DNA from: Octopus sinensis
Taxonomy: Eukaryota
Direction of reading: 5' to 3'
Length of the DNA: 64,000 nucleotides
Assembly: GCF_006345805.1 (NCBI RefSeq)
Contig: NC_043005.1
Span: 56,296,001 to 56,360,000, forward strand
Shown here piece by piece: positions 2,638-39,424 of the stretch. The translations under genes and the position numbers were made by a program. The notes beneath the pieces are model-generated. The model saw nothing but the letters and a program-made list of their open reading frames with translations, searched no databases and was not told the DNA's origin. Positions within the stretch are counted from its first letter, which is position 1. Each line of letters starts with the position of its first letter.

Positions 2638-4507
2638 TGTTGAACTTTAAATTTTGTAAAATTCTTAGAATTTAATAATCAGTACCAAATGAAATGTTTT
2701 TTTTATATGAAGCCATGGAATTCTAGAAGAATAATTCTTATAGTAAAAGCATGGGAATATTCCTTTCATTAAAACTAAAATCAATAATTTTTTCAATTAC
2801 TTTCTAATAAAGTTACAAACTAGAATGGTTAGCTTTTAGAATTTAATTTTTAATGTCCACAATATTGGCATGCAAACTTGGATAAATTTTAAATACTTGG
2901 TGAGAGGAGGGTTAAAATGGAATTGGAATAATTTAGAATGCTGTTTATGATTTAAAGAAATTTTCAATAGCCATTAGGTTGAGGTGACATGCTGCTGGTT
3001 ACATGGTTGTGAGGTCAAGATAAGGTGTGGTTATGTCTACCTTGCAAAGATCTATGGATATGTTTGTTCTGGTGCATTTAATGGAAAAAACAGATTCCAT
3101 CCTTACTTTGTCAATTTGGAGTAGGAAAGGTACTCAGTCAGCAATACAGTTTCTTCATTAATAGAGAAAATTCTAGATTTACATAATACATTCTATCCAT
3201 AATGATTGTCCAGTGTGTTGTAGCCATCAAAGGAATGTTGACATCTTGCATTCGCTACACTTGGAGCTAAAAGTCTGCAAGATGTCACTCTGCAGTAGAA
3301 GCAATTGTTTTCAGCTGCATGGATTGGCACAACATGAAATATGTCTTACTCAAGGACACAATGCAATCTGGACTGCAAATTGAACCCATGATCTTATGAT
3401 CATAAGTCCAACAACCTAACCAATAGGCTGCTCACCTTCACATGCCATCCATAATAATACAGAAAAATACTTATTAGATAATGATTTTAAAATGACAATA
3501 GACAATCAATAAATTAATAAAGCTGAAAAGCTATATCTAAAGGAATATCCAGTTTGGAGGGTGTGGAAAATCTCTGTCTTAGCTTGCAAGAAATGTCAGA
3601 TATGAATCCATAAAAGTGAAGCATTTTCTCTGATAATAATAGATTTTACCCTTTAGCATTTAGATTACTCTGTGAAATGTAATGCTTATTTATTCACATT
3701 ATTTTGAATTAATTATGCATTATTTTTTGCCTTTAGTAGAAAGGATTATTATTATTATTATCGTTATTAAATCATCTGTAAGACTAGCCAAATTATGTTA
3801 TACTCCATTTGATAAATCAAGTTATAAACTTTACATATGCAAGTGGTATTATATAGAAATGAAAGAGTACTCTATATAGTGTAACAAGTAGAGTAAATAT
3901 TTCTTTATTTTTAAATATCATATATAAGTTAGTCGACTACTTTCCCATTGCTTCAAGTTTTGATGGTAAAAGCTGTCATTTGGGGGAAGAGTAGCAGCTA
4001 CTGGAGTCTGAAGCAAATTATGCAAGATTATAAGCATCTGAAGATTGCTGGTCATTCTGGCATGAAATTTGAAGTAGGTGAAATGTAAACTTTAACTTTA
4101 ATATATTGCACACACACACAAATATGTAATATATATATACATAATTAATTGACTGAGAAGTTACAAAAGTGATGGGAGGACCAAGAGTTCAGGGCATTGC
4201 ACTTTAATTTGATAAGTGCCTTGTCTAAAACTCCTAGTCCATGATCCAATTCCGTAACTTTCAAGCCAGTTAAAATTATACAATATATTAATGTTGTGGT
4301 GTTTTGTTTTGTTTTGTACTTTTTGTGTGGGGATATTATACAGTGATTAAACTTTATCTGATCTTGAACTCAGTGTGAAATAAATATGTTTATCGTAAGT
4401 GGTGACATTATATACATTTTGCTGGGCCAGAAGCTCTGACAAACCATCCAGTCTAGTGTAACTTTTATATATCTGTCACCTGTTTATGACTGTATATATA
4501 TACATGA

Positions 4508-18051: not shown

Positions 18052-18078
18052 TTTTTTTTCTCCAAAGCCTCTGCATGC
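18052..18078 (-). CDS. Clc: Candidate 27-nt Clc microexon (adds HAEALEKKK)
   Basis: About 35-nt pyrimidine tract ending tcctctacag| and consensus donor |gtaagta; phase 2-2, open frame. Confidence 0.68.
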
Positions 18079-22358: not shown

Positions 22359-22397
22359 CCACAAGTGATGTCTGCAAGCTCGGCTGCGGCAGCAGCT
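22359..22397 (-). CDS. Clc: Candidate 39-nt Clc cassette exon (adds AAAAAELADITCG)
   Basis: ttgttcttccacag| acceptor and TGG|gtaaga donor; phase 2-2, open frame, GC-rich island within an AT-rich intron. Confidence 0.68.
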
Positions 22398-30113: not shown

Positions 30114-30184
30114 CTGTGGCACATCTGCATCACTCAAACCATTAACTGTTGCACTTGATTCGTCATAGGTGTTAAACCCATCAG
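30114..30184 (-). CDS. Clc: Clathrin light chain, exon 2 (ADGFNTYDESSATVNGLSDADVPQ)
   Basis: ttatag| acceptor and CAG|gtatgc donor. 71 nt, phase 1->0; keeps the frame between exons 1 and 3. Acidic linker with VNG motif. Confidence 0.88.
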
Positions 30185-34220: not shown

Positions 34221-35057
34221 CATGGTCTGATCAATACGTATCTGGACTGTTGCCATAGTAACAAAACTAAAGCCCACAGAGTAAAGCTGGTATGCACAGA
34301 TGGACTTTGAACTCTGTTGTGCATGTGCACTAAGTTTTAAAGCTCTAGTTCACTTCTGCTGTTTACAGCAGTGCTTGGAAGGAAGGTGTGTAGCATGTGG
34401 TCGTTGCATTGATCATGACAGAGAAAGTTGAGCAGAGAATCTGCATCAAATTTTACCAAAAGCTTGGTGATACCTGCTCAGAGGCCTATGCAAAGTTTTC
34501 AAAAAGTTTTTGTCATTCTCGACATAATCAAGATCTTGCACAACCAAAACCCCAAGTACCTTTTTTTGTCAACTAAAAGCAATTTTGGCACAAACTTGGC
34601 AGACATGCATCTCATACCCAAATCTTCAGTGAGAGTGAACTGAACCGTAACTAATCTGCACACCCTCTAATAACTCACATATGGTGATTCGGCAATTTCC
34701 CCTCACAGCTGCACACATGTATGCAATGTTTTTCTCAGTTCTGCTGGTTGCAGGTCTCCCAGAACGTTCATCACTAGCAACATCTTTATGGCTATCTTGG
34801 AGACGTCTGAACCACTTCTGTGCAACTCATACGCTTTCTGAGCAAGTATCGCCATGACAACTTCCTCTGTCATGGTCACTGCGACGATCGCATGCTAAAC
34901 ACCTTCCTTCTGATCACTGCTGTAAACAGAAGTGAGTTAGAATGTTAAAACTTAGTGTGTATGCACAGCAGAGTTCAAGGTCAATCTGTGTTAGGTGGCT
35001 TCACTCTGCGTGCTTTAACTTCGTTACTATGGCAACAGTCTGGATACTTATTGTCAG
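34221..35057 (-). mobile_element. Mariner-derived non-autonomous element with about 200-bp inverted arms
   Basis: TA at 34219-34220. Terminus catggtctgatcaatacgtatctggactgttgccatagtaac is mirrored at about 35020-35057. Transposase remnants: EQRICIKF, DERSGRP, AKFVPKLL. Confidence 0.85.
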
Positions 35058-35395
35058 GTAAGTGACAACTATGTAGAAGCTAATAATTTTTCACAAAATA
35101 CACTTCTATTCGATATGACGGTAAAGTGGTTACATTAATTTTCAACAGATAGCAGAATATAAATAATCTAATACTAGTCAATGAATGGTATGCTGACTTT
35201 TCGATCATGCCCTAAATTAGAAAATACATCGCACCTTTTGACAGGTTGAATCAGGGTTTAATCCGTTCTTTTTTCTTCTTTTTCACTCGTTTATATGAGA
35301 ACATTTTAAGTAGGAATTAGTAAATATTAATTCACTGACAGTCAATATCCTATCTGAATATTAAAAAGACAGAGGAATGCCAGACTATTTCAGAG

Positions 35396-36059
35396 AGAGG
35401 CAGAAAATGATTAGCTTATGTTGTGAGAAGAGTTAGTGCACTAGAGTTAATTCGGTCAGTTTTTAACAACTTTAACTGCTACGTACCTGTGGTTGGAGGA
35501 GTAACATCTGCAACAGGGGGTTGTCATCTTCAAGACCTATATATATATATATGTGTGTGTGGTCAGTAAAAAGATCAAGGAGTTGGAGACTAATGTAAAG
35601 GTCCCATCAGAAGTCTGATAAGGAGAAATTCGACGAGAAAAAAATTGTTATCTAATTAATTACCCACCAAAGTTGTAGGAACTTGCCACAATTCATTGGA
35701 AAGGGTAAATTTTTTATCATTTGAACCAGAGGCAGAAAATGATGAGCTTATGTTGTGAGAAGAGTTAGTGCACTAGAGTTAATTCGATCAGTTTTGAACA
35801 ACTTTAACTGCTACGTACCTGTGGTTGGAGGAGTAACATCTGCAACAGGGGGGTTGTCATCTTCAAGACCTATATATATATGTGTGTGTGGTCAGTAAAA
35901 AGATCAAGGAGTTATAGACTAATGTACAGGCCCCATCAGAAGTCTGATAAGGAGAAATTCGACGAGAAAAAAATTGTTATCTAATTAATTACCCACCTAA
36001 GTTGTAGGAACTTGCCACACTTCAAAGGGAAAGGGTAAATTTTTTATCATTTGAACCAG
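35396..36059. repeat. Tandem duplication, 2 x 332 bp, each unit carrying a copy of the Clc exon 1 3' end and donor
   Basis: agaggcagaaaatga begins at 35396 and 35728. The units differ by several substitutions and small indels. Confidence 0.92.
35819..35869 (-). CDS. Clc: Candidate 51-nt cassette exon derived from the duplicated 3' end of Clc exon 1 (GLEDDNPPVADVTPPTT)
   Basis: Homologous to 37266-37316, with tatag| acceptor and CAG|gtacgt donor; phase 1-1, frame intact. Pyrimidine tract is weak. Confidence 0.4.
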
Positions 36060-36759: not shown

Positions 36760-37265
36760 GATCTGCGTGTGTTACTTATCAGAATATAAGAAATGTATGG
36801 GATGGGTTTCAGACACGAAGTGAGGTATCTATTTAGAGGCGAATAACTTTTTTACTAATTAGCTTTCGGTTCAGTATGTTATTGAAATAGCACACTAATT
36901 TTCAACAGGCAGATCAATATTACAAGCAATTCACTGATAGTCAACGAATGACAACGACTATTTTCGATCATCAGCTACAAATATATATATATATGTATAT
37001 TCATACATTGAACTTGTATCACGCCATCTGACAGGTTGTTTCAGATTTTAGTGTTCTTTTTCTCGATAGCATTTTAAATAAGAATTTAGAGAATATTAAT
37101 TCAATTGCGACTGAACAGTCAAGACAAATAATATAAACGAATGACTAATAGATCGAATATTTATGTATTTCAGAAATGTAACATGAAATAATGGGCGTAC
37201 ATTTTGAGGGGAGTATCTGGAAGATCTCAATTCGGTCAGTTTAAACAACTATAACAGCAACGTAC

Positions 37266-37413
37266 CTGCAGTAGGTTGAGGGGCATCTGCAACGGGAAAG
37301 TTGTCGTCTTCAAGACCTGCGAGTTCTGTCTGTTCACGAGCTAAAAAGTCAGCAGCAGGGTCTTCTTCGACATTTCCATCACCAGCAGACTCGAAATTCT
37401 CGAAATCAGCCAT
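37266..37413 (-). CDS. Clc: Clathrin light chain, coding exon 1 (MADFENFESAGDGNVEEDPAADFLAREQTELAGLEDDNFPVADAPQPTA)
   Basis: ATG at 37413. EEDPAADFLAREQTELAGLE matches the conserved N-terminal light-chain segment (human EEDPAAAFLAQQESEIAGIE). Ends CAG|gtacgt; 148 nt, phase 1. Confidence 0.95.
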
Positions 37414-37852: not shown

Positions 37853-38071
37853 ATGGAAACTTGTGTTGAAATATCACGTCAGATCGCTTCTTTGGAATCG
37901 GAGAAAAACAATGTTTACAAGAAATCTTTTACAGATGCTTTGAGAGAAAAATACGGCAGTGGCGATAAAGACTGTAATTACATTGTTGATGGTGTCTTTA
38001 TCAACCTTGTTGTAGGCAGGTCGCCTTCCAAGAACGGTTCCGACGCCGAGTTTGCCCACCTTCGTAATGTG
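37853..38071 (+). CDS. TBCEL: TBCE-like (TBCEL), first coding exon (METCVEIS...KKSFTDALREKYGSGD...GRSPSKNGSDAEFAHLRNV)
   Basis: SFTDALREKY and SPSK resemble human TBCEL SFMQVLCEKY / SPMK. GTG|gtaaga donor, 219 nt, phase 0, joins in frame to 61706. The exact start codon is uncertain. Confidence 0.85.
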
Positions 38072-38114
38072 GTAAGAATTACTAAAACTACCTCACAATT
38101 AACACTACATAATA

Positions 38115-38251
38115 TATGTGTGTGTGTACGAATGTATGTTTATGTGTGTGCATATGTGTGTGTGTACGGTTTATGTGTGTGCATATGTGTGTGTGTGTAC
38201 GAATGTATGTTTATGTGTGTGCATATGTGTGTGTGTACGAATGTATGTTTA

Positions 38252-38302
<51 letters not shown>

Positions 38303-38397
38303 GTATATATATATTTATATATATATATAGATAGATAGATAGATAGATATACATACATACATATATATATAGATATATATATATATATATGCATATA

Positions 38398-38464
<67 letters not shown>

Positions 38465-38465
38465 G
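38115..38465. repeat. GT-rich minisatellite (gtgtgtgtacgaatgtatgtttatgtgtgtgcatat) followed by (TA)n/(GATA)n
   Basis: Direct reading; starts about 45 nt after the TBCEL exon 1 donor. Confidence 0.9.
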
Positions 38466-39357
38466 TTTAATTTAGTACTGATGACTATTAATTTTCGTGC
38501 GTGTGCGCGCACACACACACACACACAGAAATAATTTGGTATTTTAAATTATGGCTATTAAAAACATTAGCGAACATTACATACACACACACACAACACA
38601 CACACGCACACACACACACACAATCAAAATGCAGGTCAGATAGGAGGCTATACGTGGTTGCTCGATGTGCTAGAAATAGCAACCAAAGTTCCCTTAAACC
38701 ATAGCCTTCTAACTTTAAAAAAAAATTAAGGACATATTGGTCATTTTAGTTTTATATACACGTCTAGATAAAAAAAAAATATTTAAAAAATTACAGGGTG
38801 GTCGTATCTGGAAAAACTTTTGATACTAGGTCTAAGCTGACCTGAAACTAAACGAGATATCTGAAAGCAACACCAATAAACACACCCGAACAGGAACAAT
38901 GTTCTTGTTGCCTTAAGGACGAATTGGCGATCGACGAATTATTATCATTATTTATTATCATCGTTATTATTATTTCTGAAAATATGCTGACTTTTCGTTT
39001 CATTATCGTTTAAAATAGTAAAAATAACCTTGTGTTTATTTATATGCCTAGTTCCATCAATACTTCCCAAAAGGTAATCATAGATTTGTCTGTTGCTTCA
39101 GTTTCTGCACAGTTTGGCTATTGCAGGAATTGTCTTATTGTTTACTATTTTTAATCTTTGTTTTTCTTTTCTTAGAATAGGCGTTTATCTGTTTTGTACT
39201 TGTCGTTAAACTATACAAGTTCAGCATACGACACACACACACATATACAGATGCACAAACATACACACAGAGGCACATATATATACATGCATGGAGGTGC
39301 ACTCATACAGACACACACACACTTTCATAATGTGTATACATATTCTGCTTATATATT

Positions 39358-39424
39358 TTAGATAGATAGATAGATAGAGATAGGTAGATAGAGATAGATA
39401 GATAGATAGATAGATAGAGATAGG

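What the first reader, a model, noticed from the sequence alone, without database searches (positions are those of the whole stretch)
35396..36059. Tandem copies of the Clc exon 1 3' end in intron 1: possible exon birth by duplication
Seen: each 332-bp unit contains a diverged copy of the last about 50 nt of exon 1 plus its donor and the first about 35 nt of intron, starting exactly at the internal AG|GTCTTGAAG. The copy at 35819-35869 is 51 nt, phase 1-1, and reads GLEDDNPPVADVTPPTT versus GLEDDNFPVADAPQPTA, with four synonymous changes and the frame kept. It has a TA-repeat-supplied AG and a CTGAC branch-like motif just upstream. The copy at 35487-35536 is 50 nt (one base shorter in a G run) and would frameshift. 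Inference: a young or decaying cassette exon that would duplicate the segment just after the conserved N-terminal motif.
Basis: partly seen in the sequence, partly recalled or inferred. Interest (0 to 1): 0.72.

Follow-up and report, generated by a model that had tools for sequence, protein, structure and literature searches.

The report
Octopus clathrin light chain duplicated cassette exon
The repeat holds a real, already annotated 51-base optional exon of the octopus clathrin light chain gene, born long ago by copying the end of exon 1 and copied once more recently; it is a tidy but ordinary case of exon duplication.

Summary
Window 35396-36059 is a two-copy 332-bp tandem (95% identity). Each unit carries a copy of the last 51 nt of clathrin light chain exon 1 plus its donor and proximal intron.

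The window is Octopus sinensis, 100% identical to GCA_006345805.1. The "possible" exon is already in public annotation. Splicing exon 1, 35869-35819 and exon 2 reproduces O. sinensis RefSeq isoforms exactly.

The exon is not young:
- O. bimaculoides has a single 51-nt copy.
- Argonauta hians has a 45-nt copy, still in frame.
- A cuttlefish and other molluscs lack it.

The source duplication covers about 480-500 bp, not about 90 bp. It runs from the base after the internal AG in exon 1 to about 430-450 nt into intron 1.

Only the 332-bp tandem is young. O. vulgaris shares it and O. bimaculoides lacks it. In O. vulgaris both copies are 51 nt, and annotated isoforms carry 0, 1 or 2 of them.

The 50-nt copy B (35536-35487) differs from its O. 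vulgaris orthologue only by C5 versus C6. Including it would give a premature stop in exon 2. It is either a very recent lesion or a homopolymer assembly error.

Verdict: this is a new example of a known process. Interest is low to moderate.

The parts
37266..37413 (-). Clathrin light chain exon 1. The ATG is at 37413, the coding part is 148 nt, the donor is CAG|GTACGT and the following intron is phase 1.
   Evidence: The five-exon model gives a 207-aa protein identical to CAI9729144.1.
37266..37316 (-). Source segment: the last 51 nt of exon 1, encoding (G)LEDDNFPVADAPQPTA. It is preceded by the internal AG at 37318-37317.
36818..37317 (-). Older paralogous segment, copy 1: the exon 1 tail plus about 450 nt of intron 1.
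   Evidence: L004 2097-2596 against 3877-4354, 64% identity, E 3e-37. The same is seen in O. bimaculoides (482 nt, 65%, E 5e-45). families D6-D8 also show it.
35060..35537 (-). Older paralogous segment, copy 2: cassette B plus about 430 nt of downstream intron, collinear with 37317-36818.
35396..36059 (-). Young 332-bp tandem duplication. Unit A is 36059-35728 and unit B is 35729-35396.
   Evidence: It is present in O. vulgaris and absent in O. bimaculoides.
35819..35869 (-). Cassette exon A: 51 nt, phase 1-1, encoding GLEDDNPPVADVTPPTT. Acceptor ...tatatatag|GT, donor CAG|gtacgt. This is the copy used in annotated O. sinensis isoforms.
   Evidence: the models with A equal P0131, P0128, P0121 and P0004.
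35487..35536 (-). Cassette copy B: 50 nt as assembled (C5 instead of C6). If included it shifts the frame and gives a stop in exon 2. Its O. vulgaris orthologue is 51 nt and is annotated as an exon.
35891..35895 (-). CTGAC branch-point-like motif upstream of cassette A, with its A at -23. It is preceded by CTTTTTA and followed by (CA)n(TA)n.
   Evidence: Inferred from sequence only.
35562..35566 (-). CTGAC branch-point-like motif upstream of cassette B, with its A at -27.
   Evidence: Inferred from sequence only.
35764..35769 (-). ACTAAC motif 50 nt downstream of the cassette A donor. It is conserved at a similar offset in O. bimaculoides, the SRR11869384 species and A. hians, and is absent from the introns that follow exon 1.
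   Evidence: There are only 6 ACTAAC in 23.9 kb of gene strand.
35432..35437 (-). The same ACTAAC motif, downstream of cassette B.
30114..30184 (-). Exon 2 (71 nt), the acceptor to which exon 1 or a cassette is joined.

Best explanation
**What it is.** The window is the Octopus sinensis clathrin light chain gene on the minus strand. Intron 1 holds an octopod-specific alternative cassette exon of 51 nt, phase 1-1.

**Origin (inferred).**
- A segment of about 0.5 kb was duplicated and placed about 1.3 kb further into intron 1.
- The segment starts at the base after an internal AG in exon 1 (codon 33) and runs about 430-450 nt into the intron.
- The copy kept exon 1's own donor (CAG|GTACGT). It gained an acceptor from an AG directly upstream, with a CTGAC branch-like site and a weak CA/TA-rich tract.
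- Because the copied piece starts and ends in phase 1, it splices in without changing the frame.

**Effect on the protein.** Inclusion adds a second GLEDDN-PVAD-x-x-P-x-T unit. It sits directly after the conserved N-terminal clathrin light chain motif, in the variable acidic linker.

**Second duplication (shown).** In the common ancestor of O. vulgaris and O. sinensis, a 332-bp tandem duplication made a second copy of the exon with its splice sites. It has CT(G/C) microhomology at the junction. O. vulgaris therefore has annotated isoforms with 0, 1 or 2 extra units.

**Copy B in this assembly.** It has lost one C from a C6 run. Its inclusion would give a premature stop in exon 2 and a likely NMD target. 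Only copy A contributes to annotated O. sinensis proteins.

**Regulation and function (inferred).** The weak acceptor fits regulated, partial inclusion. A conserved ACUAAC 46-50 nt downstream of the donor could be a site for a STAR-family protein or SF1. The functional consequence for the protein is not shown. The most likely effect is on the length and charge of the N-terminal linker next to the Hip1/Hip1R- and heavy-chain-knee-interacting motif.
For: **Identity of the locus**
- The window is 100% identical to GCA_006345805.1 over 27.4 kb.
- The protein is 100% identical to an annotated 207-aa clathrin light chain with PF01086.

**Annotation in four species**
- Annotated isoforms carry the insert at the exon 1/exon 2 junction in O. 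sinensis, O. vulgaris (one or two copies), O. bimaculoides and A. hians.
- These proteins are reproduced exactly by splicing the genomic exons.
- In the O. vulgaris annotation, alternative forms were added by PASA from Iso-Seq and RNA-seq alignments (PMC10700109).

**Homology**
- Exon tail plus intron matches the cassettes at E 2e-16 to 7e-16 over 91 nt.
- The paralogy extends to 480-500 nt, at E 3e-37 in O. sinensis and 5e-45 in O. bimaculoides.

**Age**
- A. hians keeps an AG|45 nt|GT copy in phase, which forms a conserved island. The cassette is 69% identical to Octopus against 53-58% for its flanks. BLAST gives 122 nt at 67%, E 4e-8.
- The unit tree separates the exon-1 type from the cassette type with both genera on each side, support 81/81.
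- In the cuttlefish, exon 1 ends at the same position and phase, and its 16.5-kb intron 1 has no copy.
- Other molluscs have no insert at this site.

**Young tandem**
- It is present in O. vulgaris with orthologous A and B units and absent in O. bimaculoides.

**Copy B**
- It is 250/251 identical to its O. vulgaris orthologue; the only difference is the C-run length.
- Its inclusion gives a premature stop in exon 2.

**ACTAAC**
- There are 6 on the gene strand in 23.9 kb. Two of them lie at +50 of the two cassettes.
- The motif is conserved in the other octopods.
Against: - No read-level transcript evidence could be obtained here. A peptide search across the exon 1/cassette/exon 2 junction found no transcript-derived fragments in the protein collection. 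Inclusion therefore rests on third-party gene models.
- The basis of the A. hians model (RNA or homology projection) is unknown to me.
- Constraint on the peptide is weak at short range. O. sinensis and O. bimaculoides differ by 3/51 nt (2 non-synonymous, 1 synonymous), no better than the flanks.
- Between copies A and B in O. vulgaris, 0/51 against 11/278 substitutions is not significant (P=0.13).
- In the SRR11869384 octopod the copy has diverged faster than its upstream flank (74.5% against 87%) and is 47 nt to the canonical donor. The exon is therefore dispensable in at least one lineage.
- A single origin shared with Argonauta is favoured but not proven (AU test p=0.19 for the alternative).
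Confidence: 0.82

Rival explanations
1. Neutral pseudo-exon or splicing noise. The copies are spliced in at a low level only because they inherited a good donor. They have no function, and annotation pipelines picked up rare or NMD-bound transcripts.
For: - The peptide is no better conserved than its flanks between O. sinensis and O. bimaculoides.
- The copy has decayed in the SRR11869384 species.
- Copy B is frameshifted in O. sinensis.
- The acceptor tract is weak, with 0.50 pyrimidine.
Against: - The reading frame, phase, AG and GT are all kept in Argonauta despite a 6-nt length change, while the surrounding intron is no longer alignable.
- The GLEDD start is identical at 14/14 nt between Argonauta and Octopus cassettes.
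- The exon is annotated in many isoform combinations in four species.
- Intron sequence downstream of the cassette is conserved.
Confidence: 0.13
2. Reverse polarity. The GLEDDN... unit was originally a separate small exon that was tandemly duplicated. The first copy was later fused to exon 1 by intron loss at the internal AG|GT.
For: - Detectable homology starts at the base after an internal AG that sits in a CAG|GT context.
- No significant homology was found upstream of it.
Against: - In the cuttlefish, exon 1 has the same 148-nt length, includes the tail and ends in the same phase, with no extra copy in intron 1.
- ELAGLEDDNF is contiguous and conserved in all molluscan proteins aligned. 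A tail that is part of exon 1 is therefore the ancestral state.
Confidence: 0.03
3. Assembly artefact. The two 332-bp units are collapsed or mis-joined haplotypes rather than a true tandem.
For: - There are only two copies at 95% identity.
- The array lies next to microsatellites, and the assembly is long-read based.
Against: - The independent O. vulgaris assembly GCA_951406725.2 has the same two units in the same order.
- Unit A equals unit A and unit B equals unit B across the two species, over the cassettes +-100 nt.
- O. vulgaris gene models join both copies in one transcript.
Confidence: 0.02

Closest known systems
Alternative exons that arise by tandem exon duplication (Kondrashov & Koonin 2001 and Letunic, Copley & Bork 2002, cited from my own knowledge; reviewed for human genes in PMC8373072, which I listed but did not read in depth)
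   Same: - The new exon is a sequence homologue of the neighbouring exon.
- It has the same length as the copied piece (51 nt) and the same phase.
- It kept the parental donor, lies in the adjacent intron and is alternatively spliced.
   Different: - Classic cases copy a whole internal exon and are spliced in a mutually exclusive way, giving a substitution.
- Here only the 3' third of the FIRST exon was copied, together with about 0.45 kb of intron.
- The acceptor had to be supplied at the breakpoint.
- The copies are additive cassettes (0, 1 or 2 extra units), so the protein gains an internal repeat rather than swapping a segment.
Neuronal insert exons of vertebrate CLTA and CLTB (18-residue and 12-residue inserts; PMC8712872)
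   Same: Both are small in-frame cassette exons that diversify clathrin light chains by alternative splicing.
   Different: - The vertebrate inserts lie near the C-terminal part, after the heavy-chain-binding region.
- The octopus gene has its own two cassettes at that analogous place (window 22397-22359, 13 aa; 18078-18052, 9 aa).
- The cassette studied here is N-terminal, directly after the conserved 22-residue motif, and has no counterpart in the vertebrate or other molluscan proteins aligned.
Exonisation of intronic sequence, as with Alu or other transposon-derived cassette exons (from my own knowledge)
   Same: A lineage-specific cassette with a weak acceptor that sits in low-complexity sequence, and with partial inclusion.
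   Different: The coding part is not transposon-derived. The 332-bp unit has no other copy in the 64-kb window apart from microsatellite matches. The open frame was inherited from exon 1.

Membership tests
Clathrin light chain (Pfam PF01086) | Protein matches the Clathrin_lg_ch family over its length. | tested here: met
   The 207-aa model is 100% identical to CAI9729144.1 and has a precomputed PF01086 hit. There are 2990 homologues at E<=1e-10.
Clathrin light chain (Pfam PF01086) | Conserved N-terminal acidic motif (EEDPAA.FLA.Q...AG.E.D), known in vertebrates as the 22-residue consensus. | tested here: met
   EEDPAADFLAREQTELAGLEDDN is present and nearly invariant across molluscs. The motif is described in PMC8712872.
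Tandem-exon-duplication-derived alternative exon | Significant sequence homology between the alternative exon and an adjacent exon of the same gene. | tested here: met
   91-nt matches at 79-80% identity, E 2e-16 to 7e-16. 38-39 of 51 exonic bases are identical.
Tandem-exon-duplication-derived alternative exon | Same length class and same reading phase as the parental segment. | tested here: met
   51 nt against the last 51 nt of exon 1, both phase 1-1. The A. hians copy is 45 nt and still in phase.
Tandem-exon-duplication-derived alternative exon | Mutually exclusive use of the duplicated exons (the substitution type). | tested here: not met
   All annotated isoforms keep the exon 1 tail and add 0, 1 or 2 cassettes. 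This is an additive cassette, not a mutually exclusive pair.
Tandem-exon-duplication-derived alternative exon | Transcript evidence for inclusion and skipping. | tested here: inconclusive
   Public gene models with and without the exon exist in four species. The O. vulgaris alternative forms come from PASA on Iso-Seq and RNA-seq. No reads or transcript contigs could be examined here.
Exon under purifying selection | Exon more conserved than flanking intron, with an excess of synonymous over non-synonymous change. | tested here: inconclusive
   Octopus against Argonauta: exon 69% identical, flanks 53-58%. O. sinensis against O. bimaculoides: 94% against 89-93%, with 2 non-synonymous and 1 synonymous change. 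The SRR11869384 species shows faster change in the exon than in its upstream flank. At 51 nt the test has too little power.
STAR-protein (QKI/HOW-type) or SF1-regulated cassette | ACUAAY element in the intron close to the regulated exon. | tested here: met
   ACTAAC lies at +50 of both cassettes and at +46 in A. hians. It is conserved in four octopods and is rare elsewhere in the gene.
STAR-protein (QKI/HOW-type) or SF1-regulated cassette | Inclusion depends on the protein binding that element. | not testable with these tools
   This needs a minigene or knock-down experiment.

The most novel reading that the evidence does not exclude
The locus may be a small exon array caught while it expands: one unit in cuttlefish and other molluscs, two in most octopods, three in O. 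vulgaris. If the single-base loss in copy B is real, the sibling species O. vulgaris and O. sinensis differ in their clathrin light chain isoforms. O. vulgaris could make the form with three GLEDDN units, and O. sinensis could not. If inclusion is tissue-regulated, for instance in the nervous system through the conserved ACUAAC element, then the number of acidic GLEDDN units next to the Hip1R- and heavy-chain-knee-binding motif could tune clathrin assembly or actin coupling. That would be an octopod-specific N-terminal counterpart of the vertebrate neuronal inserts.
Probability: 0.15. Interest if true: 0.5.

Novelty: new member of a known kind. Interest (0 to 1): 0.3.

Why it matters
It is a clean, datable example of how part of a first exon can become an optional internal exon. 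The copied piece brought its own donor and reading phase and needed only an upstream AG.

The second duplication shows the same exon being amplified again within the last speciation interval.

For clathrin biology it adds an N-terminal, lineage-specific source of light-chain diversity, next to the motif that contacts Hip1/Hip1R and the heavy-chain knee.

For genome annotation it flags a one-base homopolymer difference. That difference decides whether O. sinensis has one usable cassette or two.

None of this overturns current understanding. The exon is already in public gene models and the mechanism is well known.

Tried and rejected
1. **Homology upstream of the internal AG.** By eye, CTTTTTA, TGATGG and GAATTTC seemed collinear between the 5' part of exon 1 and the sequence upstream of the cassette. 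That would have meant the whole of exon 1 was copied. Local and anchored alignments with shuffles and intron-window controls gave no robust signal: z=-0.7 for the local alignments, and p=0.03-0.99 for the anchored ones, with only O. bimaculoides nominally below 0.05. I rejected it as unsupported.

2. **Simple tandem origin of the old duplication.** I tested whether unit 1 (about 1.26 kb) continues to match unit 2 beyond 480 nt. It does not. The distal part has either turned over or was never copied.

3. **Transcript evidence from the protein collection.** A 108-aa peptide spanning exon 1, the cassette and exons 2-3 found only three distant hits and no octopod transcript fragments.

4. **Purifying selection between copies A and B in O. 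vulgaris.** Not significant.

5. **Independent check of the C-run in copy B.** The Logan contig L005 turned out to be another species and ends just after its single cassette.

6. **Identifying the species behind SRR11869384.** No paper in the library holds the accession.

7. **Dispersed repeat or structured RNA overlapping the unit.** There are no other copies in the window and no Rfam hit in 12000-40000.

8. **Literature on this exon.** No paper in the library links clathrin light chain, octopus and alternative splicing, other than an abstract book.

Full report
**1. The observation**

Tandem Repeats Finder reports one array at exactly 35396-36059, with period 329, 2.0 copies, 94% matches and score 1201. 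A self-BLAST places the two units at 36059-35728 and 35729-35396 on the minus strand, 94.9% identical, E 1.6e-150.

Each unit carries a copy of the 3' end of an exon that lies 1.4-1.8 kb away. Window 37318-37229 matches 35871-35781 (79%, E 7e-16) and 35538-35449 (80%, E 2e-16).
- The copy at 35869-35819 is 51 nt and encodes GLEDDNPPVADVTPPTT.
- The copy at 35536-35487 is 50 nt, because a C6 run is C5.
- Both copies are preceded by ...CTTTTTACTGACC(AC)n(AT)nAG and followed by GTACGT.

**2. The gene**

The exon at 37413-37266 (minus strand) starts with ATG and encodes MADFENFESAGDGNVEEDPAADFLAREQTELAGLEDDNFPVADAPQPTA. A tblastn probe and inspection of splice sites gave four more exons: 30184-30114, 27418-27298, 24833-24722 and 13691-13520. 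All have AG/GT borders and consistent phases, and together they give a 207-aa open frame.

That protein is 100% identical to an annotated clathrin light chain (Pfam PF01086) of Octopus vulgaris. The DNA of the window is 100% identical over 27.4 kb to Octopus sinensis assembly GCA_006345805.1, chromosome record CM016867.1 (locus L004). It is about 98-99% identical to O. vulgaris (L002) and about 90-94% identical to O. bimaculoides (L003). The window is therefore O. sinensis.

**3. The "possible" exon is already annotated**

Aligning the closest database proteins shows an insert at the exon 1/exon 2 junction:

| Species | Insert | Example accessions |
|---|---|---|
| O. sinensis | GLEDDNPPVADVTPPTT, once | XP_036361865.1; XP_029641093.1, XP_029641094.1 and XP_029641095.1 (sequences shared with O. 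vulgaris records) |
| O. bimaculoides | GLEDDNPPVEDVTLPTT, once | XP_014774089.1, XP_014774092.1, XP_014774093.1 |
| Argonauta hians | GLEDDTPVEAVQSDS, once | GAB1610892.1 |
| O. vulgaris | GLEDDNPPVADVTPPTT, 0, 1 or 2 times | two copies in CAI9729138.1, CAI9729139.1, CAI9729142.1 |

Splicing the window's exon 1, 35869-35819, exon 2 and so on reproduces P0131, P0128, P0121 and P0004 residue for residue. The same holds for the A. hians, O. bimaculoides and two-copy O. vulgaris models from their own genomic DNA.

The O. vulgaris genome paper states that alternative forms were added by PASA from aligned Iso-Seq and RNA-seq data (PMC10700109). From that method I infer that the isoforms with 0, 1 and 2 cassettes are transcript-derived. 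I could not look at reads. A peptide search spanning the junctions found no transcript fragments in the protein collection.

**4. Anatomy of the duplications**

*(a) The old event.* In O. bimaculoides, which has no 332-bp tandem, the segment L003:2097-2578 is collinear with L003:3357-3827. The first is the exon 1 tail plus intron and the second is the cassette plus intron. The match covers 482 nt at 65% identity, E 5e-45.

In O. sinensis the equivalent is 37317-36818 against 35537-35060, at 64% identity, E 3e-37 (also families D6-D8 and alignment A2). The alignment begins at the first base after the internal AG of exon 1.

Upstream of that point I found no significant similarity to the 5' part of exon 1. 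Beyond about 480 nt the two units no longer match.

*(b) The young event.* The 332-bp tandem is present in both O. sinensis and O. vulgaris. Unit A groups with unit A and unit B with unit B across the two species. It is absent from O. bimaculoides. It therefore arose after the split from O. bimaculoides and before the split of O. vulgaris and O. sinensis. This also excludes collapsed haplotypes.

The junction ...gcctctg|gttcaaatg... compares with the flanks ...gaagctg|gttcaaatg... and ...gcctctc|tctgaaat.... This shows 2-3 nt of microhomology.

**5. Age and distribution**

A. hians keeps a copy 3.1 kb into intron 1. It has the form AG|45 nt|GTATGT in phase 1-1. Its first 14 nt are identical to the Octopus cassette, and a similar TG/TA-rich stretch lies before the AG.

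Around it only the cassette and about 55 nt of downstream intron can be aligned to Octopus (122 nt, 67%, E 4e-8). The cassette is 69% identical against 53-58% for the 100-nt flanks.

A maximum-likelihood tree of the 160-nt units puts all exon-1-type units on one side and all cassette units on the other, with Argonauta on both sides (support 81/81). The alternative, with the two Argonauta units together, is not rejected (AU p=0.19).

In the cuttlefish Acanthosepion pharaonis (L006), exon 1 has the same 148 nt and phase. Its 16.5-kb intron 1 and the rest of the 72-kb locus hold no further copy of the tail. Gastropod, bivalve and chiton light chains have no insert at this site. Their long isoforms carry an unrelated insert one exon further on.

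The simplest reading is a single origin in the octopod lineage, after its separation from decapodiforms and before the Octopus-Argonauta split.

**6. How constrained is it?**

- O. sinensis and O. bimaculoides differ in the cassette by 3/51 nt (two non-synonymous, one synonymous). That is no better than the flanks.
- Copies A and B in O. vulgaris are identical in the 51 nt and differ at 11/278 sites elsewhere. The Poisson probability of zero is 0.13.
- A Logan contig from run SRR11869384 (L005) comes from another octopod, 85-90% identical in non-coding sequence and with an identical exon 1 peptide. In it the single copy reads GLKDYKTPVAVITLPT and is 47 nt to the canonical GTACGT. It is 74.5% identical to O. 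bimaculoides, against 87% for the upstream flank. An in-frame 51-nt version would need a weak GTGTAT donor.

The exon has thus been maintained over a long time in some lineages and appears to have been let go in at least one. This fits an optional segment of a variable acidic linker. It does not fit an essential domain.

**7. Copy B in this window**

Over the cassette plus or minus 100 nt, O. sinensis and O. vulgaris are identical in both units, apart from the C5/C6 run in copy B.

As assembled, including B gives a frameshift and a stop in exon 2, whether B is spliced in alone or after A. The resulting open frames are 82 and 99 aa. By the usual rule this is an NMD substrate, because the stop lies upstream of several exon junctions (my own knowledge).

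No O. sinensis model with two copies turned up among the proteins I retrieved. Whether the missing C is real cannot be decided here.

**8. How it probably works**

Shown:
- The cassette has exon 1's own donor and about 40-95 nt of similar downstream intron.
- It has a weak acceptor region, 0.50 pyrimidine at -23..-4 against 0.65-0.85 for most other exons of the gene.
- It has a CTGAC with its A at -23 (cassette A) or -27 (cassette B).

Inferred:
- Partial, regulated inclusion.
- An ACTAAC lies 50 nt downstream of each cassette donor and at +46 in A. hians. It is conserved in O. bimaculoides and in the SRR11869384 species, is absent from the paralogous position after exon 1, and occurs only six times on the gene strand in 23.9 kb.
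- ACUAAY is the known binding motif of STAR-family splicing regulators and resembles the SF1 branch-site motif (my own knowledge). This is a lead, not a result.

At the protein level, the insert repeats the last six residues of the conserved N-terminal light-chain motif (GLEDDN) plus a Pro/Val/Thr-rich spacer. In vertebrates that motif carries the EED residues that contact the heavy-chain knee and bind Hip1/Hip1R (PMC8712872). A change in the length and charge of the linker next to it is the most likely effect. It has not been tested.

**9. Comparison with what is known**

Origin of alternative exons by duplication of a neighbouring exon is well established. This case differs in three ways:
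- Only the 3' third of the first exon was copied, together with intron.
- The acceptor was acquired at the breakpoint.
- The result is additive cassettes, not a mutually exclusive pair.

It is not related to the vertebrate neuronal inserts. The octopus gene has its own two small cassettes at that analogous C-terminal position (22397-22359 and 18078-18052).

**10. Verdict**

This is an established, annotated, octopod-specific cassette exon, with a recent second copy. It is a new example of a known process, of low to moderate interest.

The two open points are both cheap to settle with public reads: the true length of the C run in copy B, and the inclusion pattern of the cassettes.

Noticed in passing
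window 22359-22397 and 18052-18078 (minus strand): There are two further small cassette exons of the same gene, between exon 4 and the last exon. One is 39 nt and encodes AAAAAELADITCG. The other is 27 nt and encodes HAEALEKKK. They are combined freely in annotated isoforms and sit where vertebrate CLTA/CLTB carry their neuronal inserts.
   Followed up: partly
window about 37170-37200 (minus strand); L001 about 2185-2215; L006 about 1715-1740: A short non-coding element about 70-95 nt into intron 1 (CTCA[AC]AAT.[GA]TACGCCCAT[TC]A) is conserved between Octopus, Argonauta and the cuttlefish, although the rest of the intron no longer aligns. A diverged copy follows the cassettes. It could be a promoter-proximal or splicing element.
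   Followed up: partly
L005 3608-3680 (Logan contig SRR11869384_272377): An unidentified octopod has an identical exon 1 peptide and a decayed single copy of the cassette (GLKDYK..., 47 nt to the canonical donor). The contig ends in a tRNA-like sequence (GGCGCAATGGCCCAGTGGTTAGGG), perhaps a SINE.
   Followed up: partly
window 34858-35057 and 34227-34430: There is an inverted pair of about 200-nt segments, 80% identical, just beyond the old paralogous segment. They could be two copies of a transposable element in opposite orientation, or the ends of one element.
   Followed up: no
window about 37853-39413 (plus strand): A neighbouring gene for a leucine-rich-repeat protein (620 aa in the public gene call) is transcribed divergently from within about 450 nt of the clathrin light chain start. 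The same arrangement is seen in O. vulgaris, O. bimaculoides, A. hians and the cuttlefish, so the two genes probably share a conserved bidirectional promoter region.
   Followed up: no
L006 20083-20181 (Acanthosepion pharaonis); proteins P0017, P0016, P0080, P0058, P0062: The cuttlefish gene has an extra exon after exon 2 that Octopus lacks. The long isoforms of gastropod, chiton and bivalve light chains carry a Gly/Asp-rich insert at about the same place, before TNGPTD. The N-terminal linker seems to be a recurrent site of lineage-specific inserts.
   Followed up: no
proteins CAI9729137.1/CAI9729145.1 and CAI9729141.1/CAI9729143.1: In O. vulgaris, pairs of different transcript records give the same one-cassette protein. 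This would be expected if some transcripts use copy A alone and others copy B alone, since their peptides are identical. Different UTRs would explain it equally well.
   Followed up: no
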